Shown: one piece after another, positions 34,381 through 60,385 of the stretch
How the letters are laid out: each line of letters begins with the position of its first letter
Numbering within the stretch: position 1 is the first letter of the stretch
Virus record (IMG/VR): IMGVR_UViG_3300042367_000228
Span: 186,001-250,000 of that record
Direction: 5' to 3' (one strand)
DNA: 64,000 bases
Notes under the pieces: generated by a model
Database searches by the model: none
What the model saw: the letters and a program-made list of their open reading frames with translations, nothing else
Told to the model about the DNA's origin: nothing
Translations under genes and position numbers: made by a program

Positions 34381-35049
34381 TTACATATAATGTGCTCTAT
34401 GCACTGCATCTGTATAACCAACATCAATTACAACTGGTTTACCGTTAAATATACCCCAATTAGCTGTTCTTACGAAGTCAAATAACCCGATATTAAAATT
34501 AACTGCAAGCTCAGTTAATGCCTGTGCATATTCTTCGCATAACTCAACATCTTCGTCTGTGTAATTAAAGCGTTCTGATTGTAATTCACGGATAACTTCA
34601 TTGTGACTTAATATCAGACCTTTTGCATCGGTACTAGCTGCTGCCATTGAAACTAATAACTGTAATGTACCGCACTTCATTATGTTACACAATTGTTTTT
34701 CAGTAGCTTTCTGTGCTTTTTCCATATGAATCCAAACAGGAGCATCATGCGCTTCGTCATAATCAATAATTGGAATAGTAATACCTAATTGTTGCACATA
34801 ACCATCATCTAATATATTTGCTTCTGCTTTGTTTTGTGCCATGCCTTTTATATTATGGGCAACTTTAAGAACAGTAGTCCTACCTAGGTATTCTATTTCA
34901 AATGCAGTCCTTGATGAGCCCCTGCCTAACTTTTGAGCTCGTGCTGCAGTATAATCCATTCTTTTTTTGTAAGTGTTATCCGGAGTAAATACATTGCTAT
35001 CCCAATCCGGAGGTAAGGGAGCTTCGTTGAGTAATTCTGATATTTTCAT
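34381..35049 (-). CDS. Kinase-like hypothetical protein with MKISELLNE leader
   Basis: LGRGSSRTAF..VLKVA..E..D..NWG..PVVIDVG resembles a minimal kinase fold; TAAATA upstream. Confidence 0.55.
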   Translation of the reverse strand: MKISELLNEAPLPPDWDSNVFTPDNTYKKRMDYTAARAQKLGRGSSRTAFEIEYLGRTTVLKVAHNIKGMAQNKAEANILDDGYVQQLGITIPIIDYDEAHDAPVWIHMEKAQKATEKQLCNIMKCGTLQLLVSMAAASTDAKGLILSHNEVIRELQSERFNYTDEDVELCEEYAQALTELAVNFNIGLFDFVRTANWGIFNGKPVVIDVGYTDAVHRAHYM

Positions 35050-35167
35050 ACTATTATTTAGTCATCACAATCTAATAAAACCATTAATGTTATAATTGTA
35101 AAAATTATCGCAATCATTACTGCTCCAAATTCGTCTGCTATGTTAACCATACTTTTCCCCCTTAGAC

Positions 35168-35195
35168 AAGAAAGGGGACCTAAGTCCCCTTTCTT
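35168..35195. terminator. Intrinsic terminator hairpin
   Basis: AAGAAAGGGGAC-CTAA-GTCCCCTTTCTT. Confidence 0.75.
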
Positions 35196-35254
35196 AAAGT
35201 ACTTAACTATTAATATTTATTAAGCAGATAAGTCTTGTTTTAGAAATTTTGAAT

Positions 35255-35428
35255 TTATCTTTCTTTGTGATGTTCTAAAGGAAGATGATGTCCTGGATGT
35301 TTGTAGTGTCGCTTGTAGTAGTGATCAAAGTTACCATCACGTAAATACTCACGATGTACAGGCTGTTCAGTACAGCCTGTAGTTAAATATGCCGCTAAAA
35401 ATATACTAGCGACGAGTAATAATTTCAT
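35255..35428 (-). CDS. Small His-rich putative lipoprotein
   Basis: Signal peptide ending LTTGC. Confidence 0.5.
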
Positions 35429-35987
35429 CAACAAGTCCATAATCCACACTCTCTTGAGCACTCATAAAATAGTCACGACTCATATCTTGTTTGAGTTTAT
35501 CAAACGATTGACCAGTATTTTTTACATACACTTCTGTTAAGTAGGTATTTAACTTCAATGTTTCTTCAAGTGCAATTTGCATGTCAATAGCAGTACCGCG
35601 TGTACCTGAACTAACTTGATGGATCATGTGTCTTGCGCTTGGAAGAATTTTACGTTTACCTTTAGCACCTGAGCTAGCAAGTAAGCTACCCATGCTGCAT
35701 GCTTGACCCATTACAATAGTTGAAACATCAGGTTTGATAAAGTTCATTGTATCAAGAATAGCAAGTCCTGCCGTAACTGAACCGCCTGGACTGTTAATAA
35801 AGAAACTAATATCTTCGTTGCCTTGACTTTCTAAAAAAAGCAACTGAGCAACAATAATACTTGCAGAATGCTCGTTAACATCTGAATCAAGCATAAGAAT
35901 TCTATCTTTAAGCAATCGCGAATAAATGTCATAGGATCGTTCGCCTTTTGCTTCTGACTCTACAACCATTGGGATTAAAGCTGGCAT
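35406..35987 (-). CDS. clpP: ATP-dependent Clp protease proteolytic subunit
   Basis: [41 protein letters not shown]. Confidence 0.95.
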
Positions 35988-36051
35988 ATATGTATCTCCT
36001 TGTTAAGTAATAAAAATATAATTATACAGTAAATGTTACAGTTTGTCAACA

Positions 36052-36285
36052 CTAACGTTTAGCGTTGACAACCGTAATATCAGGTCCATTACTAACAAAA
36101 CTTAGTTGTCCCATATATCCTTCAAACTGATGACCATTCCACTCAAGATGTAATTTAACATTTTTATCAATTACTACGTTAAGGTGTTTCTTTTCCTTAA
36201 ACGATGCAACCTCTGCAACCATCTTTTTACCGTTATCTTCACAGATAATTTCGCATGTGTCATCTACATATTCTCGTCTTTGCAT
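36052..36285 (-). CDS. Hypothetical protein
   Basis: 77-aa ORF downstream of operon genes. Confidence 0.6.
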   Translation of the reverse strand: MQRREYVDDTCEIICEDNGKKMVAEVASFKEKKHLNVVIDKNVKLHLEWNGHQFEGYMGQLSFVSNGPDITVVNAKR

Positions 36286-36449
36286 TATTCCCCCGATACA
36301 GCGTTATGAAGTTCGACTAGTTGTGCTTCTAATGTTGCAATGTAGTTTTCAAGTTTATCAATGTGATCTGCAACTTGAGTTAAAAAAGTGTTAGTATTAG
36401 TTGATGTTGTTCTAATCATCTCACTAATTGAAATTTTTTCTTCTGTCAT
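36285..36449 (-). CDS. Small coiled-coil hypothetical protein (not in ORF track)
   Basis: AAGGA RBS; MTEEKISISEMIR...VSGE, stop overlaps next ATG. Confidence 0.55.
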   Translation of the reverse strand: MTEEKISISEMIRTTSTNTNTFLTQVADHIDKLENYIATLEAQLVELHNAVSGE

Positions 36450-36457
36450 AATATCCT

Positions 36458-36790
36458 TTATAGTTGAATGTTAAGTTCAGTTACTTTTTTAGTTATAGTA
36501 TTACGACCATACCCTAAAACTATAGCTGTTTCTTGACGTCTATTTTCATTAAACTCAAGTGCAGTTTTGATTAACACATGTTCTGCATCAGCTCCGATAT
36601 TTTTAATCGCAGGATCTTTATTAACTAACAATTGAATAACTTCGGCACGCAATAAATCTTTCCAAGATTTATTAGGACCGGTTACAAGTTGTTGATAGTC
36701 TTTTACTTGACTTTCGAGAGATTTAATTTTGTCTTCTAGCCCGTTAATATAATCGTCAATTTGTGCTAGAGTTAAATTTTTTGTATCCAT
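36458..36790 (-). CDS. Coiled-coil + Fis/NtrC-type HTH protein
   Basis: C-terminal EHVLIKTAL..RQETAIVLGYGRNTITKKVTEL closely follows the NtrC DNA-binding domain pattern. Confidence 0.75.
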   Translation of the reverse strand: MDTKNLTLAQIDDYINGLEDKIKSLESQVKDYQQLVTGPNKSWKDLLRAEVIQLLVNKDPAIKNIGADAEHVLIKTALEFNENRRQETAIVLGYGRNTITKKVTELNIQL

Positions 36791-36799
36791 AATAACTCC

Positions 36800-37579
36800 T
36801 TAAATAGTAATGTATTGTAACTTAAACTTATCATGCATGTGTTCTCCAGGATATCCTCTAGAATTGTTTAGCATAACACATTCGTTAACAATTGGTGTTT
36901 TTGGATCGTGTTGATGTCCAAAGAAAGCATAATCAAAATTAGTTAATAAATGATCTAAATTAGATCCAAACAACCCATTCATAATAGGATCATTTTTATA
37001 ATGATCAGCAGTTGTTTGCATCGATGGTGAATGATGAGTAATTAAAATATTGTTGTCATAACCAGCCTTGTCAACATGTTCCACCCATTTAACAAAGTGT
37101 TTATGACGTGCAAGTATGTCGGGTACACTAACACGAGCTTCGCCATTAAAAATAACTCGATAGTCATTTATTAATGTAGGTGCGCGTATTAATGTAAATG
37201 GATCTTCATTATTATAATCAGTCCATAATGTACCGCCTACAAACAAGTTATTATCGATGACTATATAGTCACCGTTGAGAATATGAAAGTTTTCGTATGG
37301 AAGTAATTCTTTCAATGTATCTATTGCTTCGTCAATCGACGAACCATAATATTCATGATTTCCCATAACCATAAGCACATGCTTAAACTTATCAGTAACA
37401 GTATCAAAGAAATTTGTAATATCGTCACCATCACTTGTTCTAGTTGATTCTGTAATTCTTTTAAATCTTGATACATTAAGTATATCTCCAGCTAAAATTA
37501 GCACATCTGCAGGTTCAATATCGTCTAAGATTAATGGTTCAAATTCAAAATGTAAATCTGATGCATAAGCAATTTTCAT
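36800..37579 (-). CDS. Calcineurin-like metallophosphoesterase
   Basis: SDLH, AGD, GNHE, THH, GHQH motifs. Confidence 0.88.
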   Translation of the reverse strand: MKIAYASDLHFEFEPLILDDIEPADVLILAGDILNVSRFKRITESTRTSDGDDITNFFDTVTDKFKHVLMVMGNHEYYGSSIDEAIDTLKELLPYENFHILNGDYIVIDNNLFVGGTLWTDYNNEDPFTLIRAPTLINDYRVIFNGEARVSVPDILARHKHFVKWVEHVDKAGYDNNILITHHSPSMQTTADHYKNDPIMNGLFGSNLDHLLTNFDYAFFGHQHDPKTPIVNECVMLNNSRGYPGEHMHDKFKLQYITI

Positions 37580-37587
37580 ATTCTCTC

Positions 37588-37806
37588 CTACAATCTATAA
37601 ACAACTCTACCCTTGTTAAGATCGTATGCGCTAACTTCGATCTTAACTTTGTCACCAGCAATAACTCTAATCTTGTGCCGTTTAAGCTTCCCGCTTGTAT
37701 AGCACACTAATTCATGTTCAGATTGATCTATTTTAACTCTAAACATGTTACCCGGTAACACTTCATTTACTTTTCCTGTAAATTCAATTATATCTTCTTT
37801 GCTCAT
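37588..37806 (-). CDS. infA: Translation initiation factor IF-1
   Basis: MSKEDIIEFTGKV.EVLP..FRV..SGK....IRV..GDKV.IE.S.YDL.KGR..YR. Confidence 0.92.
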   Translation of the reverse strand: MSKEDIIEFTGKVNEVLPGNMFRVKIDQSEHELVCYTSGKLKRHKIRVIAGDKVKIEVSAYDLNKGRVVYRL

Positions 37807-37818
37807 ATATCTCCAATG

Positions 37819-38148
37819 TTAGTATTTGTGAAAGCTGCCTTGAAAGCAATGACGAAGTTCATGTCCAAATGTCCAGTAGTCTGGAGTTCTTGATGTCATA
37901 ATAAGACATGAATCGCCAAATATTGTAGTAGTCCAAAATGAACACGCTTCGATCGGTTTAGGATAACCACTAAACCCTCGACGTTTACTTTCTTTGTCGC
38001 ACCCTGCTCTAATATCATCTACTTGAACCCATTTGACAGTTGTTTTATCTGTAAGATTAGTTTTTGCAGAAAACTTATCATATGGTGATTCAGCGGCAGT
38101 TGCAGTAATTGCAGTTAAGAACAATGTAGCAAAAAAAGCATGTTTCAT
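37819..38148 (-). CDS. Exported hypothetical protein with HExxH motif
   Basis: Signal peptide MKHAFFATLFLTAITATAA; GHELRHC. Confidence 0.6.
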   Translation of the reverse strand: MKHAFFATLFLTAITATAAESPYDKFSAKTNLTDKTTVKWVQVDDIRAGCDKESKRRGFSGYPKPIEACSFWTTTIFGDSCLIMTSRTPDYWTFGHELRHCFQGSFHKY

Positions 38149-38206
38149 AGTAGTTACCCCGTGTGCTGTAAATAAAGTAATATTATAGTACATTTTGTGT
38201 GCTACG

Positions 38207-38737
38207 TCAAACTTTATTTAGCTCTTTTACTTGTGCAATCATATCATTTAATAACACTGGTCTATAGTCATGATGCTCAACACAAACATTAACATATCTA
38301 GGATCAGGAACATCACCGTCCATTACTAGGTTACTATGCAAATGACCATGTAGCTGTCCGCTCCATCTATTCAGTTCACTTGGGTGAATTGGAATATGAC
38401 TCATTAACACATTTTGTTGAACATGGTATGCTCTAATATCTCTAAAGTAAGGAGTATACTCATTAAGTCTAAAGATATCGTGGTTGCCTTTGATAAGAAC
38501 CATATCTTTACAATGTAATCTTGCTAACGTTGACAACGCTCTGCGATTAATTGCAACATCACCAAGAATGTACAATTTGTCAGTTGGTTTAACAGTTTCG
38601 TTGAACCGTTTAATAAGTTCTTCATCCATCTCTTCGTAGTTATCCCACGGACGAACTGGTTTACCAGTTGATGATATAAATTTACAAATTCCAACGTGTC
38701 CAAAGTGAGGATCAGACGTTACCCATACATCTTGCAT
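38207..38737 (-). CDS. Metallophosphoesterase
   Basis: SDPHFGH, LGD, GNHD, SHIP, HGHLH. Confidence 0.85.
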   Translation of the reverse strand: MQDVWVTSDPHFGHVGICKFISSTGKPVRPWDNYEEMDEELIKRFNETVKPTDKLYILGDVAINRRALSTLARLHCKDMVLIKGNHDIFRLNEYTPYFRDIRAYHVQQNVLMSHIPIHPSELNRWSGQLHGHLHSNLVMDGDVPDPRYVNVCVEHHDYRPVLLNDMIAQVKELNKV

Positions 38738-38745
38738 TAGTTCTC

Positions 38746-39207: not shown

Positions 39208-39216
39208 GTTTATTCC

Positions 39217-39645: not shown

Positions 39646-39718
39646 GTGCGCTCCTGTGTAGTTATTAAGTATGCATATATTATATTATTGTACATTGCAA
39701 TTGTCAATAAATATTTAC

Positions 39719-49407: not shown

Positions 49408-49713
49408 CTAATCTCTTAGGATAGCTAATACTTCATCTTCACGCATAATGATAACTTCATCATCATGTAATTTAATAGGCTCTCCAGCGTGCTTTCCGTA
49501 TAACACTTTATCGCCAATTGCAACTTTTATTTCTCGGAACTGACCATTATCCATATGTTTCCCTGTTCCTATTGCTAGTACTGTTCCAATTACAGATTTC
49601 TCTTTTGAAACAGGTGCAATTAAAATACCACCTTCCGTTATACTTTCTGCAGGATCTTGTCTTACAACAATACGATCGTGCAAAGGAATTACGTTTTCTT
49701 GTGTTACTGCCAT
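49408..49713 (-). CDS. groES: Co-chaperonin GroES
   Basis: PLHDRIVV, TEGGILI, GTVLAIGTG, VAIGDKVLYGK, IMREDEVLAI. Confidence 0.92.
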   Translation of the reverse strand: MAVTQENVIPLHDRIVVRQDPAESITEGGILIAPVSKEKSVIGTVLAIGTGKHMDNGQFREIKVAIGDKVLYGKHAGEPIKLHDDEVIIMREDEVLAILRD

Positions 49714-50038
49714 GTTGTGTACCTTTGTTGTTTAGTATGTGCATATTATACACTAATAAAATTGTTTGTCAAGTGTTTTTTATTCTTTTGGATATAACAT
49801 TTCACCAATAAGTAAACAACCAAACGATAATATTAAGTAATCAATAGGTGACAACAGGTATCCACTATCATGTATATACATTAATAAAGTTACATAAAAC
49901 AATATACCTGCTGCTAACCCTTTATTGATCATTTCTTTAACTCATCCAGTCTTTGTATCTCCTTGAAAGCTGCAACTGTTTTAGTAATTGCAATTCCAAA
50001 TAAAGTTCCTACTGCTAACGCTATCGGTACTAGTGGCA

Positions 50039-50272
50039 TTATTTTTCTCCTTTTAGTAAATTATATAGTATTTCAAATGGATAATATATTCCAAATGCTA
50101 TAATTAAAAAGAGTGATAGTGGCCAACAAAAGAATCCTATCACAATAAAGTAGTTGCGAAACGGACTATGCTTAACAACTGGTGCATTTGATAAAATTGT
50201 AGCACACCCGGCCCCTAATATTAAGTATGAAATACTTAGCATTCCTATCACAATTACATCTGTTGATACCAT
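50039..50272 (-). CDS. Small membrane protein
   Basis: Two hydrophobic segments. Confidence 0.55.
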   Translation of the reverse strand: MVSTDVIVIGMLSISYLILGAGCATILSNAPVVKHSPFRNYFIVIGFFCWPLSLFLIIAFGIYYPFEILYNLLKGEK

Positions 50273-50424
50273 TACTTAACATCTCCACATTACTACTGGC
50301 CAAAAGACCATGCGGTGTGTCCATGACACTAAACTTCCAGCATCATCACTGTTATCAAATGACAACGTTGCAAAAAGTGCACCTGCTATGTAGTACGCTA
50401 TTGCTATCATTATTAAAAATTCCA

Positions 50425-51528
50425 TTACATTTCCTCTTGGGCTAAAAACCATGTACGTGCTACATATTTAACTCTTGTTATTACATCTTTGATTTCTAGA
50501 TGGCTAGCAACAAGTGTATCAGTTTCTTCTTTAACAACATCGTCTGCAATCCATTTTAAGAATACAGGAGTGCTTTTAGGTTCAATACTGATGTTGTTTA
50601 CTTTTAAGTATTCTAAACCTTGAGTAAGTCTAGATTCAGTAACTACTGTATCAGCAAACTCGTTAATGGAGTTAACTTTTTCTACATCAACACTTGCTAG
50701 TGTTTTAACTTTAGATGAACTGTGTTTTTCACCTTTAACTTTAAACATAAATCGTGATTGTTCATAACCAGGAGTAACACATTTCCAAACAATACCTTCA
50801 CCTACACCTTCAACACCAAAGTGTTGAGCAATTGGACATTGTTGTTCTACTGCAACAGTAAGATCCGCAAGCTTGTTTTGCGCAAGCTCAGGTTCGTTAA
50901 AGTTGATATCCATTGTGTATGTTTGGAAGTCATAAATTGTAAATAAATTTTCAGGCCATGCTTCGGTATTAAAACCTGCAATTTCTTTAGCATACGCAAT
51001 AGTATGCTTAAACTCAGTTGGAGTAAAATAAACGCGTTGAACATCTTCGTCTTCATTTTTACCAGCTGACCATGCAACAATGCCAAAGATAATAAACATT
51101 TTAGGAACATTACTAATTCCTACACCTTTTTGAACACCTTGCCCGCACCATTCGCCAAAGATAGAATAATGTGTTAAGTTGTAATCAACTTTGTGATGTG
51201 CAGCTGAAGTTAATAAGTTAATAAACGTTTCTTTATGTTGTTGTGCATATTTTGCCCAACCATAATTGTCATCATCTATTGTTAAAATACGTTCACGTGA
51301 TTGCGCCCAAAATTCATTATATTTAGGAAACTCGCAAGCAACGCTAGCATTAGTGCCATGTGCCTTAACAGAACCTTCAAACGTTAAAGTTGGCATAGGT
51401 GCAAATGGATCAAAGGTTGGTGCACCATTGTCATCTAACCCTTTAAAGGTAGCACGACTTTTAACTTCTCTAACTACTTGTCTAAATTGATTAATGCTGG
51501 GCCATGATTTGTGTACTTGTTTTGACAT
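50425..51528 (-). CDS. RNA ligase, Rnl2 family
   Basis: KAHGTN (motif I), QSR, FGEWCG (III), FG (IIIa), EGIVW (IV), FKVK (V) plus C-terminal Rnl2 domain. Confidence 0.85.
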   Translation of the reverse strand: MSKQVHKSWPSINQFRQVVREVKSRATFKGLDDNGAPTFDPFAPMPTLTFEGSVKAHGTNASVACEFPKYNEFWAQSRERILTIDDDNYGWAKYAQQHKETFINLLTSAAHHKVDYNLTHYSIFGEWCGQGVQKGVGISNVPKMFIIFGIVAWSAGKNEDEDVQRVYFTPTEFKHTIAYAKEIAGFNTEAWPENLFTIYDFQTYTMDINFNEPELAQNKLADLTVAVEQQCPIAQHFGVEGVGEGIVWKCVTPGYEQSRFMFKVKGEKHSSSKVKTLASVDVEKVNSINEFADTVVTESRLTQGLEYLKVNNISIEPKSTPVFLKWIADDVVKEETDTLVASHLEIKDVITRVKYVARTWFLAQEEM

Positions 51529-51585
51529 TGCGTACTCCTGTGTTAGTTAAATAAAAATATATTATATAATAAGTGTTAGCACTTG

Positions 51586-51807
51586 TCAAACTTTATTAAC
51601 AAGTAATTGTGCCGCATCACTTTTCCTTAGTGTTAATGAAAACCCACGTAGCTTAATTTCAATCGGATCTCCTAATGGCGCAACTCTAACTACTTGTACT
51701 TCTGTATTACGAGTAAGTCCCATGGCTAGTAGTTGCTTACGAGATGTTTTGCCTACATATCCAGTAACAACACCAACTTCATTAACCTTTAAGAGATCTA
51801 GTGTCAT
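51586..51807 (-). CDS. feoA: FeoA ferrous iron transport protein A
   Basis: LLAMGL..V.VVRVAPLGDPIEI..RG..L.LRK.DA. Confidence 0.9.
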   Translation of the reverse strand: MTLDLLKVNEVGVVTGYVGKTSRKQLLAMGLTRNTEVQVVRVAPLGDPIEIKLRGFSLTLRKSDAAQLLVNKV

Positions 51808-53345: not shown

Positions 53346-54023
53346 TCAAGGTTTAAGTTTGCAATTATTTCCGTGATATCGTTTCATGCCATTAGATTTT
53401 CCTAATTTATTGCAATAAGGGCATATAATTATCTCCATCGGCGATGTTTGAAAAACTTTACCTTTTCTTACAGCACTCATTTTATTGCGAGTCTCTATAG
53501 ATGGAGATTTGCCTTTATTAGGAGGTATCCTTCCTTTATTTGAATTGCTGATTTTAGATTTGTGTTCTTCTGATAAAGGTTTTCCTTTTTTAGCTACAGA
53601 TAATTTAGATTTATACTCTATAGACATGTTTTCTTTAGCTTTACTAATTTTACTTCGAGTTTCGGATGTATGAGTTTTTCCTGTATTTGCTATAGCAATT
53701 TTAGATTTGTGTTCTTCTGATAAAGGTTTTCCTTTATGCATTACACTAACTGCTTTAGCAAATTCTTTTCTAATCCAACCATAACTTTTATTAGTAGCGC
53801 GACCAACTGACATCATATGTGCTGCTTTAATTAATTTATGATTATTTGGATATATCTTTATAAGTACTTGATGTGCTACATAATGAGCTTCAGGTGTTAA
53901 CTTTACTATATTAGTTGCATGATTAGTACCTCCCATACATTTGGGAATGATATGATGCTTTTCTGTATAATCTGCAATCATATCTTTTGCAGTTAATTGT
54001 TCGTATATTTTTTGATAATTCAT
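53346..54023 (-). CDS. HNH homing endonuclease with NUMOD3 repeats
   Basis: EKHHIIPKCMGG.N...N...LT..AH..AH; repeated KGKPLSEEHKSKI. Confidence 0.88.
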   Translation of the reverse strand: MNYQKIYEQLTAKDMIADYTEKHHIIPKCMGGTNHATNIVKLTPEAHYVAHQVLIKIYPNNHKLIKAAHMMSVGRATNKSYGWIRKEFAKAVSVMHKGKPLSEEHKSKIAIANTGKTHTSETRSKISKAKENMSIEYKSKLSVAKKGKPLSEEHKSKISNSNKGRIPPNKGKSPSIETRNKMSAVRKGKVFQTSPMEIIICPYCNKLGKSNGMKRYHGNNCKLKP

Positions 54024-54555: not shown

Positions 54556-54631
54556 GCTATAATTTCAACTAGTATACACTCACTGTTTTCAAAAGTCATC
54601 TTTCATTTTACCAAACGATAAATATATTACT

Positions 54632-55021
54632 ATGAAAATACATGAATTATTAGAAAACCACCATGGCTCGTTAGCACGGGATAACGGTGATGTAATCACA
54701 ATCGGTGATGCAAGAATTGATATCGATACTAAAGCACAGTTTTCACCAAGACCACAATCTGTTATTGAATTCTTAGTTCCTAAAGAATTACGCGGACAAG
54801 GAATCGGAACACAGTTACTAACAAAAGCTGTAGCAAAGTATCCAATGTTAGGCGGACAAGTAAGCTCTATAGCATCGTTAAAAGTATTTTGGAATTTAGG
54901 GTTTAGAAATCCAAGAATGCCAGAAGCATCGTTTCAAGATCATGCTGATAGAATGAATGAATACAGTTCAGTGTTTATGGCACGTACTAACGAACACGGA
55001 GTTCCATATGAAAATACATGA
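54632..55021 (+). CDS. GNAT acetyltransferase with MKIHELLE leader
   Basis: VPKELRGQGIGTQLL acetyl-CoA motif, FWNLGF; ATAAATA upstream. Confidence 0.75.
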   Translation: MKIHELLENHHGSLARDNGDVITIGDARIDIDTKAQFSPRPQSVIEFLVPKELRGQGIGTQLLTKAVAKYPMLGGQVSSIASLKVFWNLGFRNPRMPEASFQDHADRMNEYSSVFMARTNEHGVPYENT

Positions 55022-55412
55022 AATAATCTCTGAAGAAATTAAAACAAGACTTGATGCCAAATGCTGGAAAGGCAAACATAAAGAAGGTACTAAAGTAAAA
55101 GGTGGTACTAGAGTTAACAACTGTGTGCCAAATGAATCAGTAGATGAAGCAGCAGCATGGCAAAAGAAATCAGGAAAGAACAAAAACGGTGGATTGAATG
55201 CTAAAGGTGTTGCTAGTTATCGTAAAGAACATCCTGGAAGTAAATTACAAACTGCAGTAACTACTAAACCGAGTAAACTTAAACCTGGAAGTAAAGATGC
55301 AAAACGCCGTAAAAGTTTTTGTGCAAGAATGGGCGGTATGGAAGGACCTATGAAAGACGAAAAAGGCAAACCAACTAGAAAAGCATTAGCATTGAGAAAA
55401 TGGAATTGCTAA
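55008..55412 (+). CDS. Basic conserved phage protein with MKIHEIISEE leader
   Basis: CWKG..NNCV module and GGLNAKG..RRKSFCARM..ALRKWNC module. Confidence 0.7.
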   Translation: MKIHEIISEEIKTRLDAKCWKGKHKEGTKVKGGTRVNNCVPNESVDEAAAWQKKSGKNKNGGLNAKGVASYRKEHPGSKLQTAVTTKPSKLKPGSKDAKRRKSFCARMGGMEGPMKDEKGKPTRKALALRKWNC

Positions 55413-55421
55413 ATTAAAATT

Positions 55422-56615
55422 ATGAAAATACAAGAAATTATAAGCGAAGCAATATCAGGTGCTCACTGGATACACGGATTGCACAATGGGTTAAATGATA
55501 TTTTAGAACAACCGTTAGGACTTACATTTAACTTAGAAACTATAAATGGATTTAATGCCATTGCAGTATACCTTAAAGATATGTCCGACGGCAGGATATG
55601 TAGTTTTTATGAGAAAATGCAACCTAGTGATATTATTTACATGTTAGAAGAGATAGTAAAGATAGCACATTATGTTATACAGCAGAAATATGCTAAAGTG
55701 TGCGCGGATGTAAGTGGAACAAACTTTTCTCATATTCAAATTCTACCTCAGTCTAATAATCCAGGAGCCCTCGCCTCGGCTGGTTATGACTATGTAACAT
55801 TCTATGAAACTGATAAGAATGCTTTCCAACATCGAGATATAGATATGCTAAAAGACTTGTTATATAGTACAGAAGCAATGACTGATGTTAACAGAGGATG
55901 GAGTAATGCTGAACAAAAGAATCTATATGTGCCTGTGATAACTGATATGTTTCAAATCGAACCTGCATTTAGAAATTTGAAACTAGGTGATTTTAGTTTA
56001 GCTGAATTCTTCTTAGACACTAAAAACATAGATACTATGGTTCACGAATTAGTACATATTAGACAACACGCACCTCAATCTAGATATAAAACTAAACGAG
56101 TATTTGATAAAGATACTAAACAGCACAAATTGGTTACTAAACAAGGCACTGAATTTAGAAGTAAAGTAGAGCCAAATCAAGAAAAGTTTTATAATGCAAT
56201 TAGAGATTTAGATAAGTCGCCTGAAAACTATAAAATATATAGTTCGTCGTTACAAGAAATACCAGCACATGCGCATGATGCAGCAGTTAGCGTTATACGT
56301 CATTTAGATTTTGCATGGGGCGGTTCGGTTGATGAATATGGCAGAGACGTGTCACATTTAAAATCTCAAGTAAAAGCACTTAAATTGATTATTGCTAATT
56401 TGTCTAATGGACCAACCGCGTTAAAAGATGTTTATGGTCACCCGATTAAAATTAGAAGATTTGAATATTTCAGTAAGACATTTAATCATCCTAACGATAA
56501 AAAGTTATATCCGGTATATAAAAAATTTGTAAAAATAATGAGTCAAGAATTAATCAATTATTACAATTATTGGAATGAAAAACTTATTAACCTTAGTAAA
56601 TCAAATGGTCAATAA
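55422..56615 (+). CDS. Hypothetical protein with HExxH motif and MKIQEIISE leader
   Basis: VHELVHIRQ followed by Y....QEIPAH (zincin-like). Confidence 0.65.
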   Translation: MKIQEIISEAISGAHWIHGLHNGLNDILEQPLGLTFNLETINGFNAIAVYLKDMSDGRICSFYEKMQPSDIIYMLEEIVKIAHYVIQQKYAKVCADVSGTNFSHIQILPQSNNPGALASAGYDYVTFYETDKNAFQHRDIDMLKDLLYSTEAMTDVNRGWSNAEQKNLYVPVITDMFQIEPAFRNLKLGDFSLAEFFLDTKNIDTMVHELVHIRQHAPQSRYKTKRVFDKDTKQHKLVTKQGTEFRSKVEPNQEKFYNAIRDLDKSPENYKIYSSSLQEIPAHAHDAAVSVIRHLDFAWGGSVDEYGRDVSHLKSQVKALKLIIANLSNGPTALKDVYGHPIKIRRFEYFSKTFNHPNDKKLYPVYKKFVKIMSQELINYYNYWNEKLINLSKSNGQ

Positions 56616-56638
56616 AAAAGCTGCCCTAAGGCAGCTTT
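56615..56638. terminator. Intrinsic terminator between tmRNA and convergent CDS
   Basis: AAAAAAGCTGCC-CTAA-GGCAGCTTT. Confidence 0.8.
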
Positions 56639-56641
56639 AGT

Positions 56642-56983
56642 TGTATTTTGGTTAATAAGGCATACATGCCCCAGAGGGGTAGGTTATTAAGCTACCATGT
56701 CAGCTGCTTCCAAAGAGAAGTCAACTGTCATATACTCGAATTTAGATGCTTTTGCGTCTATAAGTTTTGCGCTGTTTAGGACAGTCACCTCACCTGTTGC
56801 CGTCTCCATTATCTCACCAAGTCGAATCCAATTCATCCCCATTATAAAACACACTATCACTTCCCATTTGAGGGGCAGGAAGTCTACGGCTGTTGCCCCA
56901 CTCCGATACCTCTAATGTGTTTTATGGTGGAGATGTGGGGTTTCGAACCCCAGTGTTTGATGCCGTCACTTTGAAGGAATTAC
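56642..56983 (-). ncRNA. ssrA: Permuted two-piece tmRNA
   Basis: Acceptor piece ends GGGGTTCGAAACCCCACATCTCCACCA (56925); coding piece starts GGGGATGAATTGGATTCGAC (56840); G3.U70 pair; tag frame 56755-56687 AKASKFEYMTVDFSLEAADMVA followed by two TAA stops. Confidence 0.88.
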
Positions 56984-57039
56984 AACAATAATAAACACAC
57001 TAAAATATTTAATGTGCTTATTATTGTTAACTTGTGCAT

Positions 57040-57067
57040 ATTATAACATAAAAATAATATTTGTCAA
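57040..57067 (-). promoter_or_regulatory. sigma70-type promoter of tmRNA
   Basis: TTGACA-16 nt-TATAAT. Confidence 0.78.
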
Positions 57068-57149
57068 GTGTTAATGATAAATAAAAATGTAGTTCACGAT
57101 GCGCTAACATCTAACTACTCTAAACATTTTTAACTTTTAAGGAACAACA

Positions 57150-57947
57150 ATGTCCAGCAACATTATTTATACCAAACCAATCTGCGCCTGTATTATTTGT
57201 AAAAAAGAATTTTCTATTTACGGAATTCATACACATTTTGAACGTGCGCACGGAACACCTGAACAAAAACAAAAATATCCATCTGGTAATCATGGAAGAT
57301 ATAATGATGAATCATATCTTCAAAAAATAAAAACCCCTCGGCATGTAATTACTGATACATGTAAACAGTGTGGTAACACATTTACTTATGAAAAATTAGT
57401 GTCTAATACATATAAGAAAGGTTGTAGTAAATCCTGCATAACAAGTTTAAATAATAAAGCAAGAATTAACAATGGGTTTGTGCAACCTAAACATTCTTCC
57501 GAAGCAAGAAAACAAGCCTCAGAACGATCAAAAGCATTATGGCAAAATTCTGAATACGCTAAAAAAGTAATGTCGCAATCAAAACGATTTACATCAAAAA
57601 ATGAAGTCTTAATAAGAGATCATTTTATAAACACTCATCCAGAAGATGAATGGACATTTGGCGGCGGCTTAAAACATAATGGAGAAACAATTGTACGTGA
57701 TTTATTTTCTAAAAAATTAAAGATATGTTTTGAATATGACGGCATATGGCATTTTAAAGAAGTGCATGGCCAACTTGCTCGTAAGCAGTTAAAGGATAAG
57801 TTATTAGAGGAATGGTGTATTGAAAATAAATATTCTCTAATAAGACTTGATGAAAATAAGTTCAACAGTAGTTCAATTGCTGAACTAACTAAAATATTTT
57901 ATTCATTAGATAAACCTACAATTTTAAAAATTGGTGATAGGTACTAA
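57150..57947 (+). CDS. Free-standing endonuclease (Zn fingers + Vsr/DUF559-like PD-(D/E)XK domain)
   Basis: CIIC..H...H, CKQC..CSKSC; SKNE..RDLF....KICFEYDGIWHF..D..L. Confidence 0.7.
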   Translation: MSSNIIYTKPICACIICKKEFSIYGIHTHFERAHGTPEQKQKYPSGNHGRYNDESYLQKIKTPRHVITDTCKQCGNTFTYEKLVSNTYKKGCSKSCITSLNNKARINNGFVQPKHSSEARKQASERSKALWQNSEYAKKVMSQSKRFTSKNEVLIRDHFINTHPEDEWTFGGGLKHNGETIVRDLFSKKLKICFEYDGIWHFKEVHGQLARKQLKDKLLEEWCIENKYSLIRLDENKFNSSSIAELTKIFYSLDKPTILKIGDRY

Positions 57948-58154
57948 TTACTCCCATCTTAAAACAAACCATGCATGATTAGATTTAACTTGGAATACAT
58001 GTACGCCAGTGCTACAATATTGTAATAAGAATTCTTTACATTTATTCCTTAACATCCAAGTTAACACTTCATTGTAATCGTCAGATGTATTACACCTGTA
58101 TACAGGATAGTTATTCCAACCTGGATAAGTTGTTCTTGTTACTTGTTTCTTCAT
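57948..58154 (-). CDS. Small hypothetical protein (F.L.W family)
   Basis: Ends AWFVLRWE; GAGG RBS. Confidence 0.6.
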   Translation of the reverse strand: MKKQVTRTTYPGWNNYPVYRCNTSDDYNEVLTWMLRNKCKEFLLQYCSTGVHVFQVKSNHAWFVLRWE

Positions 58155-58164
58155 GTTACCTCAG

Positions 58165-58389
58165 TTAAATGCTTAATAAGAACCAGGCTAAATCTTTTTC
58201 AGATTCAAATGTTATGTGACCAAAACCTACATCCATGTTAAGATCACCTTTAAACTTATCTTTAACAAAATTTTTTGTTCTAGGTACTGATGTAACATTT
58301 TCAGGTAAGTAAACCTTATCGTGTGTTGCAATATATTGCCATTGTTTAAATGTTAGTTTATGTACTATCAAAATATCTCCCCCGCCCAT
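58165..58389 (-). CDS. Small hypothetical protein (F.L.W family)
   Basis: Ends FESEKDLAWFLLSI. Confidence 0.55.
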   Translation of the reverse strand: MGGGDILIVHKLTFKQWQYIATHDKVYLPENVTSVPRTKNFVKDKFKGDLNMDVGFGHITFESEKDLAWFLLSI

Positions 58390-58592
58390 AGCAAAGTAAA
58401 TACAAAGAAATCATCTTTATCCATATACCAATAACCAGATTGGTCACGACTTGTTTCATTGGTTATAACAAACTTTGCTGATGTGTAGCCTTGCTGTCTC
58501 ATAAATTCGTCACACAGCAATTTAGCATCAGGATCTCTGCTCCATAATTCATAAAACTCAGGATAATTATCGTATAAATCTTTTATCTTCAT
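58368..58592 (-). CDS. Small hypothetical protein (F.L.W family)
   Basis: Ends DFFVFTLLWAGEIF. Confidence 0.55.
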   Translation of the reverse strand: MKIKDLYDNYPEFYELWSRDPDAKLLCDEFMRQQGYTSAKFVITNETSRDQSGYWYMDKDDFFVFTLLWAGEIF

Positions 58593-58781
58593 TTAACCCC
58601 ACTTCAACACAAACCAGTTACGATCTTTCTCTTCTTTAAATTGAATAGTGTAATATAGCATAAACCATCTGCTGTTACTTGTTAATCCAGCAGATGGTCC
58701 AAACGTTTCAGTACACCATTCGTTAACTTCTACCTTACTTACACTGTGAGGCAGCCGTGCAGCATACCGTAACCCGCTCAT
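58593..58781 (-). CDS. Small hypothetical protein (F.L.W family)
   Basis: EWC.ETFG..FKEEKDRNWFVLKWG. Confidence 0.6.
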   Translation of the reverse strand: MSGLRYAARLPHSVSKVEVNEWCTETFGPSAGLTSNSRWFMLYYTIQFKEEKDRNWFVLKWG

Positions 58782-59053
58782 TACGAAACAGTAAGATACT
58801 TAATCTGGAACATCATAAAGCGTTTTTTGTCACTAACATCATAGTTCATAGTGTAGTAACCATCGTCATTTTTTAACATGATAACGCCGTACACTTTATC
58901 AATCCAATCTTGGAATGGCATTTGGGTAACTGCTTCAGATGCTAAAAACTCTTCTCTTGAATTACGTAACGCATTGCGATAACGATCACGGTGTTCAGTA
59001 GTTAGTTCTTCTTTTTTAGTTACAACTGGTTCTTGTTCAAGTAATAAAGACAT
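58781..59053 (-). CDS. Small hypothetical protein (F.L.W-like family)
   Basis: AGGAG RBS; ends DKKRFMMFQIKY. Confidence 0.6.
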   Translation of the reverse strand: MSLLLEQEPVVTKKEELTTEHRDRYRNALRNSREEFLASEAVTQMPFQDWIDKVYGVIMLKNDDGYYTMNYDVSDKKRFMMFQIKYLTVS

Positions 59054-59273
59054 ATAGTTCTCCTATAAAATTAAAAAAAAGTAAAATAGCAACACACTAA
59101 TGAATAATATATTAAGCTACAGATATGTAGCGGTTTGGTGTTCAATCTTGAGCAAATGTTATACAATGCTTTAAGTGTGTTGCGTATGTTGTATATTATA
59201 GCAGTATTTTAAATAATGTCAAACTTTATTAAACCTGTATTTAAATAAATACAATATACAGAGGAGTGCAAGG

Positions 59274-59555
59274 ATGCATGAAGTATTTAAACTTATAGGT
59301 GAGTTAGGCTTTCCTATCGCAGTAGCATTTGCTGGTGGGTATTTCGTATACCTAACCATTAAGCTATTGTTAGGTGGAGTGTTAGGAAGTATCAAAGGAA
59401 TGGCTGGAATCATTGTAGCATTAGATAACCGCGTTAAGACAATGAATCATGACGTCATCCGCATCGACACGATTGTATCAAATGCATTAGGGTTAAAACC
59501 AGATGTAGAACGTATATCGCGTGCTGATGGGAAAAATGATGCTCGTCGGGACTAA
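59274..59555 (+). CDS. Single-TM + coiled-coil membrane protein
   Basis: GFPIAVA TM segment; LDNRVKTMNHDVIRI. Confidence 0.65.
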   Translation: MHEVFKLIGELGFPIAVAFAGGYFVYLTIKLLLGGVLGSIKGMAGIIVALDNRVKTMNHDVIRIDTIVSNALGLKPDVERISRADGKNDARRD

Positions 59556-59566
59556 AAGGAATTAGT

Positions 59567-59764
59567 ATGCATTATTTAGATTATGTGTGGCAGTTATTTG
59601 AATTTGGAATGATCTTAGATGAAGAAATTGATCTTGATAGTTTAGGATGGGAAGATGGTTCTTATTTTAGATTAGACCGTACAACTGATGGTAGTCGTCC
59701 AGTTTTAAGAAAAGTTAAAGTAATTAAAAAATATACCCCGGGGGAAGAGAATGGATCCGAGTGA
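59567..59764 (+). CDS. Hypothetical protein (AbrB-like pattern)
   Basis: LDSLGWEDG motif. Confidence 0.55.
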   Translation: MHYLDYVWQLFEFGMILDEEIDLDSLGWEDGSYFRLDRTTDGSRPVLRKVKVIKKYTPGEENGSE

Positions 59765-60140
59765 ATTAGCTGGAGTTGTAAATAAGTACGGTTTTCCTAT
59801 TGTTATGGCAGTCGGAATGGGACTAATTATAAAATACGTGTGGGAATGGGCAACTAAAGAAGTTAAGCCGGTTATTAGTGAAGCTAATACTGTATTAATT
59901 GCTCTTATTGATCGTATTCGTATGTTAGATAATGATTTAATTAGATTAACTCAAAAGGTAAATACCGTATTACATTTACGTGGTAAGATTATTGAAAGTG
60001 ATCGTGTACTTGAACAAGTTAAAGTAGAGCGTGAAGCATCTAAACAATTTGACAAAGCTGTTCGTATGGACGATCCTAAACCGCCAAAGAAAAAAGCAAA
60101 ATCTGAAGATGATAATACTGCAGCAGCTGGAGAAAGTTAA
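59751..60140 (+). CDS. Single-TM + coiled-coil membrane protein, paralogue of 59274-59555
   Basis: YGFPIVMA TM; LIDRIRMLDNDLIRL. Confidence 0.65.
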   Translation: MDPSELAGVVNKYGFPIVMAVGMGLIIKYVWEWATKEVKPVISEANTVLIALIDRIRMLDNDLIRLTQKVNTVLHLRGKIIESDRVLEQVKVEREASKQFDKAVRMDDPKPPKKKAKSEDDNTAAAGES

Positions 60141-60142
60141 TA

Positions 60143-60385
60143 ATGAGAGTAAGTGAGATATTAGAAGGTATTGAGTTAGATGAAGCAAGAATACCTACTA
60201 GTAAAGAATTAAAAAGTGCGTTAATAAAGAAAGGATACACACCGAGTGAAGGTGGAGAACATATGAAGTTTCATGCACCTGATAAATCTCATCATATATC
60301 AATGCCTCGCGGGCCAAAACCATTAAGTATTGGCCTTGCAAGGTCTGTTATGAAAAAAGCTGGAATTACTGACGCTGATTTATAG
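60143..60385 (+). CDS. HicA-like protein with MRVSEILE leader
   Basis: KEL...L...GY....GGEH.KF......ISMP....L..GL...VMKKAG HicA pattern; no adjacent HicB. Confidence 0.65.
   Translation: MRVSEILEGIELDEARIPTSKELKSALIKKGYTPSEGGEHMKFHAPDKSHHISMPRGPKPLSIGLARSVMKKAGITDADL

What the first reader, a model, noticed from the sequence alone, without database searches (positions are those of the whole stretch)
34381..60385. Five unrelated proteins share an M(K/R)(I/V)xE(L/I)(L/I)(x)E leader: candidate capsid-packaged effectors
Seen: MKISELLNE (kinase-like, 34381-35049), MKIHELLE (GNAT, 54632), MKIHEIISEE (55008), MKIQEIISE (HExxH, 55422) and MRVSEILE (HicA-like, 60143). They lie in units preceded by late-type TAAATA motifs. 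Known: T4 internal proteins use a ~10-aa capsid-targeting peptide cut after Glu by the prohead protease. Inference: a portable packaging tag delivering acetyltransferase, kinase, protease and RNase-like cargo with the DNA.
Basis: partly seen in the sequence, partly recalled or inferred. Interest (0 to 1): 0.6.

Follow-up and report, generated by a model that had tools for sequence, protein, structure and literature searches.

The report
T4-type packaging leader on phage effectors
About nineteen unrelated proteins of an uncultivated 372-kb lake-water phage begin with the same nine-residue tag, which closely matches the tag phage T4 uses to load proteins into its head and then cuts off, so it probably marks proteins injected with the DNA.

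Summary
All five N-termini are as described. In the whole 372-kb genome, M[KR][IV]xE[LI][LI] occurs 12 times, always at a gene start (0.03-0.06 expected). A scoring matrix raises the set to about 19. The proteins are unrelated beyond the tag.

The phage has a T4-like head module, with a gp23-type capsid protein and a gp21-type (Peptidase_S77) prohead protease. The tag has the same pattern as T4's own cleaved propeptides: gp24 MAKINELLRE and IPII/IPIII MKTYQEFIAE.

Evidence that the tag is a portable module ending at a cleavage site:
- Homologues in other phages carry their own phage's version of the tag, shared with unrelated neighbouring genes.
- Fused homologues keep a hydrophobic-x-Glu site exactly at the domain border.
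- Natural strains of this phage swap the cargo directly behind an unchanged tag.
- AlphaFold leaves the tag unstructured.

Cargo identities: one kinase fold (confirmed), one HicA family member (confirmed), one weak GNAT match, DUF6321, and an HExxH protein with no recognisable fold.

Packaging and cleavage themselves are inferred, not shown. I classify this as a new member of the T4 capsid-targeting-sequence kind, in a distant jumbo phage and with unusually many cargoes.

The parts
34381..35049 (-). Cargo 1: 222-aa protein with a protein-kinase-like fold. The leader MKISELLNE is encoded at 35023-35049, and the predicted mature protein starts APLPPDWD.
   Evidence: Translation. 93 homologues; invariant G42, G44, R47, K62, E76, D191, N197 and D209. 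AF2 pLDDT 92, with residues 1-10 at 48. Foldseek top hits are all aminoglycoside or protein kinases, prob 1.0.
35055..35060 (-). TAAATA motif 6 nt upstream of the cargo 1 start codon
   Evidence: Upstream sequence. It is too close to the ATG for a typical T4 late promoter followed by an untranslated leader.
35406..35987 (-). ClpP protease subunit gene immediately upstream of cargo 1. This is context for the N-degron rival explanation.
   Evidence: Pfam CLP_protease, E=2.6e-71. The same ClpP/kinase-like adjacency occurs in an unrelated phage contig, L045.
54619..54624 (+). TAAATA (within GATAAATATA) 7 nt upstream of the GNAT-like gene, the first gene of a three-gene cargo unit
   Evidence: Sequence.
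54632..55021 (+). Cargo 2: 129-aa GNAT-like protein. Leader MKIHELLE (54632-54655); predicted mature start NHHGSLAR.
   Evidence: Four GNAT Pfam families match the same region at E=5e-5 to 6e-3, all below their cut-offs. Strain variants carry other leader alleles on an identical mature part, and a 649-aa fusion joins at ..TIKE|NHHGS.
55008..55412 (+). Cargo 3: 134-aa very basic DUF6321 protein (mature pI 10.3). Leader MKIHEIISE (55008-55034).
   Evidence: Pfam DUF6321, E=1.9e-23; pI. In T4-like cyanophages the domain is the C-terminus of 365-849-aa proteins encoded between the terminase genes.
55422..56615 (+). Cargo 4: 397-aa protein with an invariant HELVHxxQH motif. Leader MKIQEIISE (55422-55448); predicted mature start AISGAHW. 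This is a swappable cassette.
   Evidence: Homologues and the invariant motif. AF2 pLDDT 84.5, with residues 1-11 below 50. No PDB fold match. In natural strains the body is replaced by an unrelated 202-aa cargo directly after the leader.
59242..59251 (+). TAAATAAATA about 23 nt upstream of the first gene (59274) of the unit that ends with the HicA-like gene
   Evidence: Sequence; followed by a GAGGAG ribosome-binding site.
60143..60385 (+). Cargo 5: 80-aa HicA-family protein. Leader MRVSEILE followed by GIELDE (60143-60184). The Pfam domain starts at residue 21.
   Evidence: Pfam HicA_toxin 34.7 bits against a cut-off of 27. Homologues carry MKIFEILE, MKIREILE, MRISELLE or MKIYEIIE on a conserved KIPTSKEL start. 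No HicB was detected next to it.

Best explanation
The shared N-terminus is a T4-type capsid targeting sequence and propeptide. The proteins are made late in infection. The roughly 9-residue leader (M, K/R, I/V, x, E/D, L/I, L/I, x, E) docks them onto the scaffolding core of the assembling prohead. The phage's gp21-family prohead protease then cuts after the Glu of the (L/I)-x-E site. The mature proteins stay in the head and enter the host cell with the DNA. They include two or three kinase-like proteins, a GNAT-like protein, a basic DUF6321 protein, two HExxH proteins and a HicA-like protein.

Shown: the motif, its statistics, its modular behaviour, the presence of the protease, and its likeness to the T4 propeptides. 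Inferred: docking, cleavage, packaging and injection.
For: 1. Statistics: 12 strict matches, all at gene starts, against 0.03-0.06 expected. About 19 by matrix.

2. Machinery: Peptidase_S77 protease (E=5e-26) that keeps the EVDHP and GVSSRG motifs of T4 gp21; a gp23-type capsid protein; a scaffold gene and an acidic core gene, in T4 gene order.

3. Likeness to T4 propeptides read from NC_000866: gp24 MAKINELLRE, IPII/IPIII MKTYQEFIAE, IPI MKTFKEF... In T4, residues 4 and 7 of the targeting sequence direct targeting and residues 8 and 10 direct processing (PMC9026906). With the leader here being one residue shorter, these map onto I3/L6 and L7/E9.

4. The leader follows the phage, not the cargo family. 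The kinase-like family carries MKISELLNE here, MRAKEFINE in L045, MRAHEFIKE.. in L046, MKIYNLYSTLLE in Slicko01 and MKQVRLSQFLSE in XacN1, always ahead of A-PLPxDWD. In each of those phages, unrelated neighbouring genes share that phage's version. Slicko01 and XacN1 also encode S77 proteases.

5. Fused (polyvalent) homologues keep only a hydrophobic-x-E site at the same border: VVSE|APIP, EITE|APLP, VINE|AISG, TIKE|NHHGS.

6. Natural strains replace the 397-aa HExxH cargo with an unrelated 202-aa cargo. The DNA is identical up to the end of the leader and again from the stop codon and terminator. The GNAT cluster carries alternative leader alleles on an identical mature part.

7. Selection acts on the peptide. 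41% of codon pairs coding the same residue differ, against 48% expected from codon usage.

8. AF2 gives the leader pLDDT 48 and 34 on otherwise confident models.

9. TAAATA lies at -50..-8 of 9/19 leader genes against 72/494 genes overall (p=5e-4). It also precedes the scaffold and core genes, and a gp55-like sigma factor is present.

10. The cargo types (truncated kinase, GNAT, HExxH, ART-PolyVal in relatives) are those of the 'polyvalent proteins' predicted to be head-packaged (PMC5512222).
Against: - There is no virion proteome, no N-terminal sequencing and no expression data for this uncultivated phage, and the runs found hold no RNA.
- The nearest cultured relatives by capsid protein (GAP32, PA5oct, Vibrio 2.275.O) lack this leader, so proteomes from cultured relatives cannot be carried over to it.
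- The mature cargoes are not uniformly basic like the T4 internal proteins (pI 5.2-11.1).
- At least one matrix hit (genome 97982-99667, an HNH/endonuclease VII-like protein, not the first start of its ORF) is an unlikely cargo.
- In two window units the TAAATA motif is too close to the ATG to be a standard late promoter.
- The kinase-like gene lies next to clpP here and in L045.
- The complex prediction for protease plus cargo could not be run.
Confidence: 0.7

Rival explanations
1. Cleavage-only propeptide. The leader is cut by the prohead protease, or another protease, to activate or release the proteins, but it does not itself direct packaging.
For: Internal junctions of fused homologues keep only the hydrophobic-x-E site, so cleavage alone can explain that part of the pattern.
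Against: N-terminal leaders also conserve residues 2-7 (K/R, I/V, x, E/D, L/I, L/I), which a cleavage site does not need. The T4-type prohead protease acts inside proheads (PMC9026906), so a substrate has to be inside the prohead anyway.
Confidence: 0.1
2. N-terminal degron. The leader marks the proteins for timed degradation by the phage ClpP working with a host unfoldase.
For: clpP lies directly upstream of the kinase-like gene here and in the unrelated contig L045. PA5oct's single leader-like gene also lies next to its clpP.
Against: Only one of about 19 leader genes is next to clpP. A degron does not explain the conserved hydrophobic-x-E at internal domain borders, the match to the T4 gp24 and internal-protein propeptides, or the link with late promoters.
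Confidence: 0.05
3. DNA-level recombination site. The leader is conserved because it is the crossover point for exchanging cassettes, not because of what the peptide does.
For: The cassette swap begins exactly at the end of the leader, and the three adjacent genes share ATGAAAATACA.
Against: Across the 19 leaders, synonymous codons vary almost as much as codon usage predicts (41% against 48%). Other phages keep the same peptide pattern with different residues. Recombination at the leader is more likely a consequence of its conservation than the cause.
Confidence: 0.07
4. Translation-initiation feature. A/U-rich, unstructured first codons (MKI...) are favoured for expression in an AT-rich genome.
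For: Lys at residue 2 and Ile at residue 3 are the commonest residues at those positions genome-wide.
Against: Positions 5-9 (E, L/I, L/I, x, E) are not explained by this. Independent positional frequencies predict 0.03-0.06 matches against 12 seen. Related phages of similar size lack the motif.
Confidence: 0.03

Closest known systems
Capsid targeting sequence (CTS) of the phage T4 internal proteins IPI, IPII, IPIII and Alt
   Same: An N-terminal propeptide of about 10 residues on unrelated, dispensable, fast-evolving proteins. Same pattern: MK, hydrophobic, x, E, two hydrophobic residues, x, E, ending in the (L/I)-x-E site of a gp21-family protease. Cargo diverges behind a conserved tag. An ADP-ribosyltransferase cargo (like Alt) occurs in relatives (PMC9026906, PMC3012670).
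   Different: The host phage is a 372-kb freshwater jumbo phage of the Rak2/GAP32/PA5oct supergroup, not a Straboviridae member. About 19 candidate cargoes against about 4-5 in T4. Many are enzyme-like and not basic. The leader is one residue shorter, with I/V and L/I where T4 has Y and F/I.
N-terminal propeptide of the T4 vertex protein gp24 (MAKINELLRE) and the N-terminus of the gp23 propeptide
   Same: K-I-x-E-L-L-x-E is identical in pattern to the leader here. This phage's own capsid protein begins MSELLNGRW, which aligns with T4 gp23 ..KAELLNKW.
   Different: Those are shell proteins, whereas here the motif sits on non-structural, enzyme-like proteins. No separate gp24-type vertex gene was found.
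Processed ejection and inner-body proteins of phiKZ, 201phi2-1 and SPN3US
   Same: Giant phages pack many proteins that a gp21-related protease cuts after Glu (PMC5694885, PMC10052503).
   Different: Their motif is S/A-x-E. Their propeptides are mostly longer than 100 residues and are not a short shared N-terminal tag.
Polyvalent proteins of phages and conjugative elements (Iyer, Burroughs, Anand, de Souza, Aravind 2017)
   Same: The same domain repertoire: C-terminally truncated kinase, GNAT, HExxH, ART-PolyVal, RNase-type toxins. Fused homologues of the cargoes found here exist (P0067, P0095, P0102, P0118).
   Different: Here the domains are separate genes, each with its own leader. That paper did not describe a shared leader or a (L/I)-x-E border as far as my term search of it showed.
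Phage P1 Dar system and encapsulin cargo-loading peptides (the encapsulin part is from general knowledge)
   Same: Proteins are loaded into an HK97-fold shell by a dedicated signal or adaptor (P1: PMC9024508).
   Different: P1 uses ordered protein-protein dependencies. Encapsulins use C-terminal peptides that bind the shell, and no protease removes them.

Membership tests
T4-type capsid targeting sequence / gp21-cleaved propeptide | Short (about 10-20 residue) extension at the extreme N-terminus, outside the folded domain | tested here: met
   All matches lie at start codons. AF2 pLDDT is 48 and 34 for residues 1-10 on confident models. The Pfam HicA domain starts at residue 21.
T4-type capsid targeting sequence / gp21-cleaved propeptide | Ends in the (L/I)-x-E cleavage motif of the prohead protease | tested here: met
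   Sixteen of the 19 have a hydrophobic-x-E site ending at residue 8-14. Glu9 is at least 90% conserved in 68 kinase-like homologues. The same site is kept at internal borders of fusions.
T4-type capsid targeting sequence / gp21-cleaved propeptide | The phage encodes a gp21-family (Peptidase_S77) prohead protease within a T4-like head module | tested here: met
   PF03420, E=5e-26, at genome 87220-87846. The His and Ser motifs are conserved against T4 gp21. The gp23-type capsid protein lies nearby, separated from the protease only by the scaffold gene.
T4-type capsid targeting sequence / gp21-cleaved propeptide | Portable: the same tag on unrelated cargoes, with cargo exchangeable behind it | tested here: met
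   No similarity beyond the tag. Cassette swap in natural strains. Leader alleles on identical GNAT bodies. Each phage has its own version, shared with neighbouring genes.
T4-type capsid targeting sequence / gp21-cleaved propeptide | Sequence likeness to experimentally defined T4 propeptides | tested here: met
   Same hydrophobic-x-E-hydrophobic-hydrophobic-x-E pattern as gp24 and IPII/IPIII, read from NC_000866. This is a pattern match, not a statistical homology test.
T4-type capsid targeting sequence / gp21-cleaved propeptide | Late expression together with the head genes | tested here: inconclusive
   TAAATA is enriched upstream (9/19 against 72/494, p=5e-4) and is shared with the scaffold and core genes. 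A gp55-like sigma factor is present. There is no transcript data.
T4-type capsid targeting sequence / gp21-cleaved propeptide | The tag is sufficient for incorporation into the prohead core, and the protein is present in virions | not testable with these tools
   Uncultivated phage with no proteome.
T4-type capsid targeting sequence / gp21-cleaved propeptide | The tag is removed by the prohead protease | not testable with these tools
   This needs N-terminal or semi-tryptic peptide data, or an in vitro cleavage assay.
Protein kinase-like fold (cargo 34381-35049) | Gly-rich loop, beta-3 Lys, alpha-C Glu, catalytic Asp/Asn and a DFG-like Asp, on a kinase fold | tested here: met
   Invariant G42, G44, K62, E76, D191, N197, D209. 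Foldseek prob 1.0 to APH and eukaryotic-type kinases, TM 0.35-0.42. Phosphotransfer activity was not tested.
HicA toxin family (cargo 60143-60385) | Pfam PF07927 match above the gathering score | tested here: met
   34.7 bits against a cut-off of 27, residues 21-75. No HicB partner was detected in the adjacent ORFs. RNase activity was not tested.
GNAT acetyltransferase (cargo 54632-55021) | Pfam GNAT model above the gathering score | tested here: inconclusive
   Four GNAT models hit the same region, but all fall below their cut-offs (best 24 bits against 27; 20.5 against 20.7). Source annotations call cluster members GNAT.
Zincin-type metallopeptidase (cargo 55422-56615) | HExxH motif on a zincin fold | tested here: inconclusive
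   HELVHxxQH is invariant in 9 homologues. There is no Pfam family and no convincing PDB fold match (Foldseek best E=0.2; VIA best Z=6.6, helical matches only).

The most novel reading that the evidence does not exclude
A short address label that can be read directly from sequence (M, K/R, hydrophobic, x, E/D, two hydrophobic residues, x, E) is shared, in lineage-specific versions, across the wider T4 superfamily. Versions seen: T4 MKTYQEFIAE, cyanophage S-RIM8 MKSYNEFISE, lake phage contigs MRAKEFINE, and this jumbo phage MKIxELLxE. It would let the injected proteome of uncultivated phages be read from the genome alone. In this phage about 4% of genes would be head-delivered effectors (kinases, an acetyltransferase, a HicA-type RNase, HExxH enzymes). 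They would be organised as cassettes that recombine at the leader, so the label works both as a loading signal and as the joint for effector shuffling. The leader may act by mimicking the N-terminal ELL segment of the capsid and vertex protein propeptides that dock on the scaffold.
Probability: 0.4. Interest if true: 0.75.

Novelty: new member of a known kind. Interest (0 to 1): 0.6.

Why it matters
If the tag works as in T4, the set of proteins a phage injects ahead of gene expression can be predicted from sequence alone. That would apply to a large group of uncultivated freshwater jumbo phages and their relatives. It yields a concrete list of about 19 candidate first-strike effectors, most of them of unknown function, and exact predicted mature N-termini that mass spectrometry can check. 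It links the separate-gene effectors here to the fused 'polyvalent proteins', by showing the same domain borders marked with protease sites. It documents natural cargo swapping behind a fixed tag, the arms-race signature already known from the T-even internal-protein loci. It also offers a new, short targeting tag for loading foreign proteins into large capsids.

Tried and rejected
No structural test of docking was possible.
- The leader DNA pattern in the cultured relatives GAP32, PA5oct, Vibrio phage 2.275.O, XacN1 and Slicko01 gave 0-1 hits. Published virion proteomes of those phages therefore cannot be carried over. PA5oct's single hit (EST35_0271) is not homologous to any cargo here and carries no MS flag.
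- The main text of the XacN1 paper does not mention ORF170; the term search gave 0 hits. The virion protein list is in a figure that is not held.
- tblastn of two further cargoes (genome 95890-96738 and 287030-288016) against 50,697 phage records found no match.
- megablast of the window region against phage records found no match. The search for related loci found only near-identical contigs.
- Exact-pattern scans for the strain variant found only the two known IMG/VR contigs and nothing in metagenome contigs. The variant was reached instead through cluster members of the GNAT protein.
- Foldseek and VIA-align searches for the HExxH protein gave no convincing fold. I do not call it a protease.
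- TATAAATA as a strict 8-mer is not over-represented genome-wide (37 seen against about 80 expected from base composition). Only its position before starts is informative.
I reran it using references only.
- I considered and rejected two further ideas. A secretion signal does not fit, because the leader is acidic and amphipathic, not hydrophobic. Shared ancestry of the whole proteins does not fit, because there is no similarity beyond residue 12.

Full report
**What the window is.** The window is bases 186001-250000 of a complete 372,016-bp virus record with direct terminal repeats and 35.6% G+C. Its DNA occurs in lake-water and freshwater metagenomes from 24 studies, and no RNA run holds it.

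The genome carries a T4-like head module in T4 gene order (genome coordinates):
- portal, 89081-90829
- a small 83-aa protein
- an acidic 288-aa core-like protein
- a Peptidase_S77 prohead protease, 87220-87846 (PF03420, E=5e-26)
- a 364-aa coiled scaffold candidate
- a gp23-type major capsid protein, 84916-86091 (PF07068, E=2e-80)

The capsid protein is 66-70% identical to those of Sinorhizobium phage Phosso, Vibrio phage 2.275.O, GAP32, Serratia phage BF and PA5oct. The phage therefore belongs to the Rak2/GAP32/PA5oct supergroup of jumbo phages. Against T4 gp21 the protease keeps the EVDHP and GVSSRG motifs. The predicted capsid-protein maturation site, YLME|SPTAG, aligns with T4 FLTE|AEIGG. 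A gp55-like late sigma factor is present (E=3.7e-7).

**Checking the observation.** The five N-termini are exactly as reported.

- Genome-wide and in all six frames, M[KR][IVL]xE[LIV][LIV] occurs 12 times. Every one is at a start codon, and ten have a second Glu at residue 8 or 9.
- Positional residue frequencies at 494 N-termini predict 0.03-0.06 such matches. 5000 column shuffles gave at most 2.
- Without the leading Met, the motif occurs 12 times among the called gene products, 10 of them directly after a start Met. The motif is therefore specific to N-termini.
- Allowing Asp at position 5 and Met at position 7 adds four more.
- A matrix built from these 16 separates all 5652 possible starts into 19 with score 10.8 or more and the rest at 7.5 or less. 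The gap is partly circular for the 16 seed sequences, but three new members appear.
- Several low scorers have the same character: MRAQEFIKEE, MKLRELYTTIIIE and MLLRELFLLNE.
- Past residue 12 the proteins are unrelated. Only the two HExxH proteins share weak similarity, E=0.004.
- Codon choice within the leader varies nearly as freely as codon usage allows (41% against 48% differing among codon pairs coding the same residue). What is conserved is the peptide, not the DNA.
- Three related jumbo phages have 0, 1 and 0 matches.

**What the cargoes are.**

| Window position | Size | Identification | Evidence |
|---|---|---|---|
| 34381-35049 (-) | 222 aa | Compact protein-kinase-like domain. Invariant Gly-rich loop, Lys62, Glu76, Asp191/Asn197, Asp209. 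AF2 pLDDT 92. All top Foldseek hits are aminoglycoside or protein kinases. | |
| 60143-60385 | 80 aa | HicA family, above the Pfam cut-off. | |
| 54632-55021 | 129 aa | Hits four GNAT models, all below cut-off. | |
| 55008-55412 | 134 aa | Very basic DUF6321 protein. In T4-like cyanophages this domain ends 365-849-aa proteins encoded between the terminase genes. | |
| 55422-56615 | 397 aa | Invariant HELVHxxQH motif, but no Pfam family and no convincing solved fold. 'Protease' remains a guess. | |

Outside the window, other leader proteins include a second weakly kinase-like protein and a second HExxH protein. Most of the rest have no recognisable family.

**Why the leader looks like a T4 capsid targeting sequence.** I read the T4 propeptides from the T4 genome record rather than from memory:
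- IPII and IPIII begin MKTYQEFIAE|A
- IPI begins MKTFKEF..ITE|A
- the vertex protein gp24 begins MAKINELLRE|S

All follow the pattern hydrophobic-x-E-hydrophobic-hydrophobic-x-E and end in the (L/I)-x-E site cut by gp21. The leader here, K-I-x-E-L-L-x-E, is the gp24 propeptide pattern. According to the T4 literature, the first 10 residues of IPIII suffice for packaging. Residues 4 and 7 matter for targeting and residues 8 and 10 for processing, and the diverse internal proteins share only this tag (PMC9026906, PMC3012670). With the leader here being one residue shorter, those positions map onto I3, L6, L7 and E9, which are the conserved ones. This phage's own capsid protein begins MSELLNGRW, which aligns with T4 gp23 ..KAELLNKW. 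The tag may therefore copy the scaffold-docking end of the shell protein propeptide. That last point is inference.

**Comparative evidence that the leader is a module ending at a cut site.**

1. *The leader follows the phage.* Of the 93 hits to the kinase-like protein, the great majority of those whose conserved start is present carry a leader of this type, followed by Glu and then (A/T/M)-PLPxDWD. Leader lengths range from 9 to 27 residues. The leader matches the phage rather than the cargo family:
   - In contig L045 the kinase-like gene begins MRAKEFINE. Two amidoligase-like genes next to it begin MRAKEFITK and MRAKELTLD.
   - In L046 three adjacent unrelated genes begin MRAKEFIRE, MRAHEFILE and MRAHEFIKE.
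   - In Alishewanella phage Slicko01 five adjacent genes share an M-x4-LY..L-x-E leader.
   - In XacN1 two adjacent genes share ..L-x-Q-F/L-L/F-x-E|A.
   - Slicko01 and XacN1 both encode S77 proteases.

2. *Fusions keep the cut site.* In homologues where the domains are fused into one protein, the border directly before the conserved domain start keeps a hydrophobic-x-E site:
   - VVSE|APIP, EITE|APLP and ILDE|MPLP for the kinase
   - VINE|AISG for the HExxH domain, and a complete internal MLLRELFEHPIDE|AISL
   - TIKE|NHHGS for the GNAT

   Those fusions carry ART-PolyVal, GGACT and DUF4116 domains. This is the repertoire of the 'polyvalent proteins' that Iyer et al. predicted to be packaged in phage heads (PMC5512222).

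3. *Natural strains swap cargo behind the leader.* Laying lake-metagenome contigs on the window showed a dominant strain in which 55448-56607 is replaced by 586 other bases, starting right after the leader. I retrieved such contigs (L049-L052). They carry a 202-aa gene beginning MKIQEIINE|AHNRG.., with a kinase-type Gly loop and no relation to the HExxH protein. The DNA is identical through the upstream region and the leader, and again from the stop codon and terminator. Another contig joins the end of the HExxH gene to a second copy of the leader (table 5c), which suggests arrays of cassettes.

4. *Leader alleles are interchangeable.* Within the 90% GNAT cluster, identical mature parts carry MKIHELLE, MKIQEIINEE or MKIHEIINEE. 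HicA-like homologues vary the leader within the motif on a conserved KIPTSKEL start.

5. *The leader is outside the fold.* In both AF2 models the first 10-11 residues are the only low-confidence part.

**Expression timing.** TAAATA lies at -50..-8 of 9 of the 19 leader genes, against 72 of 494 genes overall (Fisher p=5e-4). Most of the other leader genes sit inside operons. The extended form TAAATA(T/G)A precedes 19 genes, including the scaffold and acidic core genes and several very large, probably structural, genes. Six of these 19 have leader-type N-termini. This fits T4-type late transcription, but it is a motif argument only. In the window, two of the motifs are only 6-9 nt from the ATG.

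**Most likely mechanism and rivals.** The best explanation (confidence about 0.7) is a T4-type capsid targeting sequence: late synthesis, docking on the prohead core through residues 2-7, cleavage after the Glu by the S77 protease, retention in the head, and delivery with the DNA. Only the sequence-level facts are shown.

| Rival | Confidence | Main objection |
|---|---|---|
| Cleavage-only propeptide | 0.1 | Does not explain conservation of residues 2-7. |
| DNA-level recombination site | 0.07 | Contradicted by the codon variation. |
| ClpP degron | 0.05 | Suggested by clpP lying next to the kinase-like gene here and in L045, but does not explain the internal cut sites or the T4 match. |
| Translation-initiation feature | 0.03 | Contradicted by the statistics and by its absence in relatives. 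|

**Novelty.** The principle is known from T4 and its close relatives. My literature searches found it discussed for T4 and, in a different form, for phiKZ-like phages (long propeptides, S/A-x-E). I found no description of such a leader in the Rak2/GAP32/PA5oct supergroup or in uncultivated jumbo phages. I therefore file it as a new member of a known kind. It is notable for the number and enzyme-like nature of the cargoes, for the lineage-specific versions of the tag, for the link to polyvalent proteins, and for the directly observed cassette swap.

Noticed in passing
window 60387-62435 (-): A 682-aa phage gene with an N-terminal membrane segment. Its copies in strain contigs are annotated with CHASE2 sensor and adenylate/guanylate cyclase domains. 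A phage-encoded sensor cyclase is unusual.
   Followed up: no
window 59222-59262; L053:11592-12572; L049:12178-12774; window 53346-54023: Strain-to-strain insertions and deletions of mobile genes. These are a Methyltransf_21 gene (1075 extra bases in runs X15 and X24), a GIY-YIG/NUMOD3 endonuclease between the HicA-like and cyclase genes in L049 and L050, and different HNH/NUMOD3 endonucleases upstream of the GNAT gene.
   Followed up: partly
window 55182-55375: Contig depth over the DUF6321 domain is 3-10 times that of its flanks in all four runs, with many partly fitting contigs. The domain is evidently shared by many other phages in the same lakes. It is also common in T4-like cyanophages and in pelagiphages.
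   Followed up: partly
L059:2869-3195 (Synechococcus phage S-RIM8): A small gene just downstream of the DUF6321 protein begins MKSYNEFISE, almost the T4 IPII/IPIII targeting sequence MKTYQEFIAE. The S-TIM4 DUF6321 protein begins MATNEIIE, ahead of a start that is conserved in the ACG-2014f homologue, which lacks this extension.
   Followed up: no
window 59274-59555 and 59751-60140 (+): Two small predicted membrane proteins that flank a 65-aa ORF and precede the HicA-like gene share a GFPI(A/V)(V/M)A segment near the N-terminus. They look like paralogues. Function unknown.
   Followed up: no
window 32958-34316 and 35406-35987 (-); PA5oct MK797984 176918-181020: DNA ligase and ClpP genes flank the kinase-like cargo. 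In PA5oct the ligase and ClpP homologues are both flagged as detected by ESI-MS/MS of virions.
   Followed up: no
genome 88833-89084 (-), outside the window: The small gp67-position head gene has a GTG-called start. An internal ATG gives MILRELFYIDP, which is leader-like and resembles MLLRELFLLNE of genome 315205-316524.
   Followed up: no
genome 24353-24979 (-), outside the window: A 208-aa gene preceded by TAAATA(T/G)A begins MKSFKQHLLE. This resembles T4 IPI MKTFKEF.. and may be a second type of leader.
   Followed up: no
window 49408-51807 (-), from the Pfam marks on syntenic contigs: Cpn10 (GroES), RNA ligase and FeoA-domain genes lie upstream of the cargo cluster.
   Followed up: no
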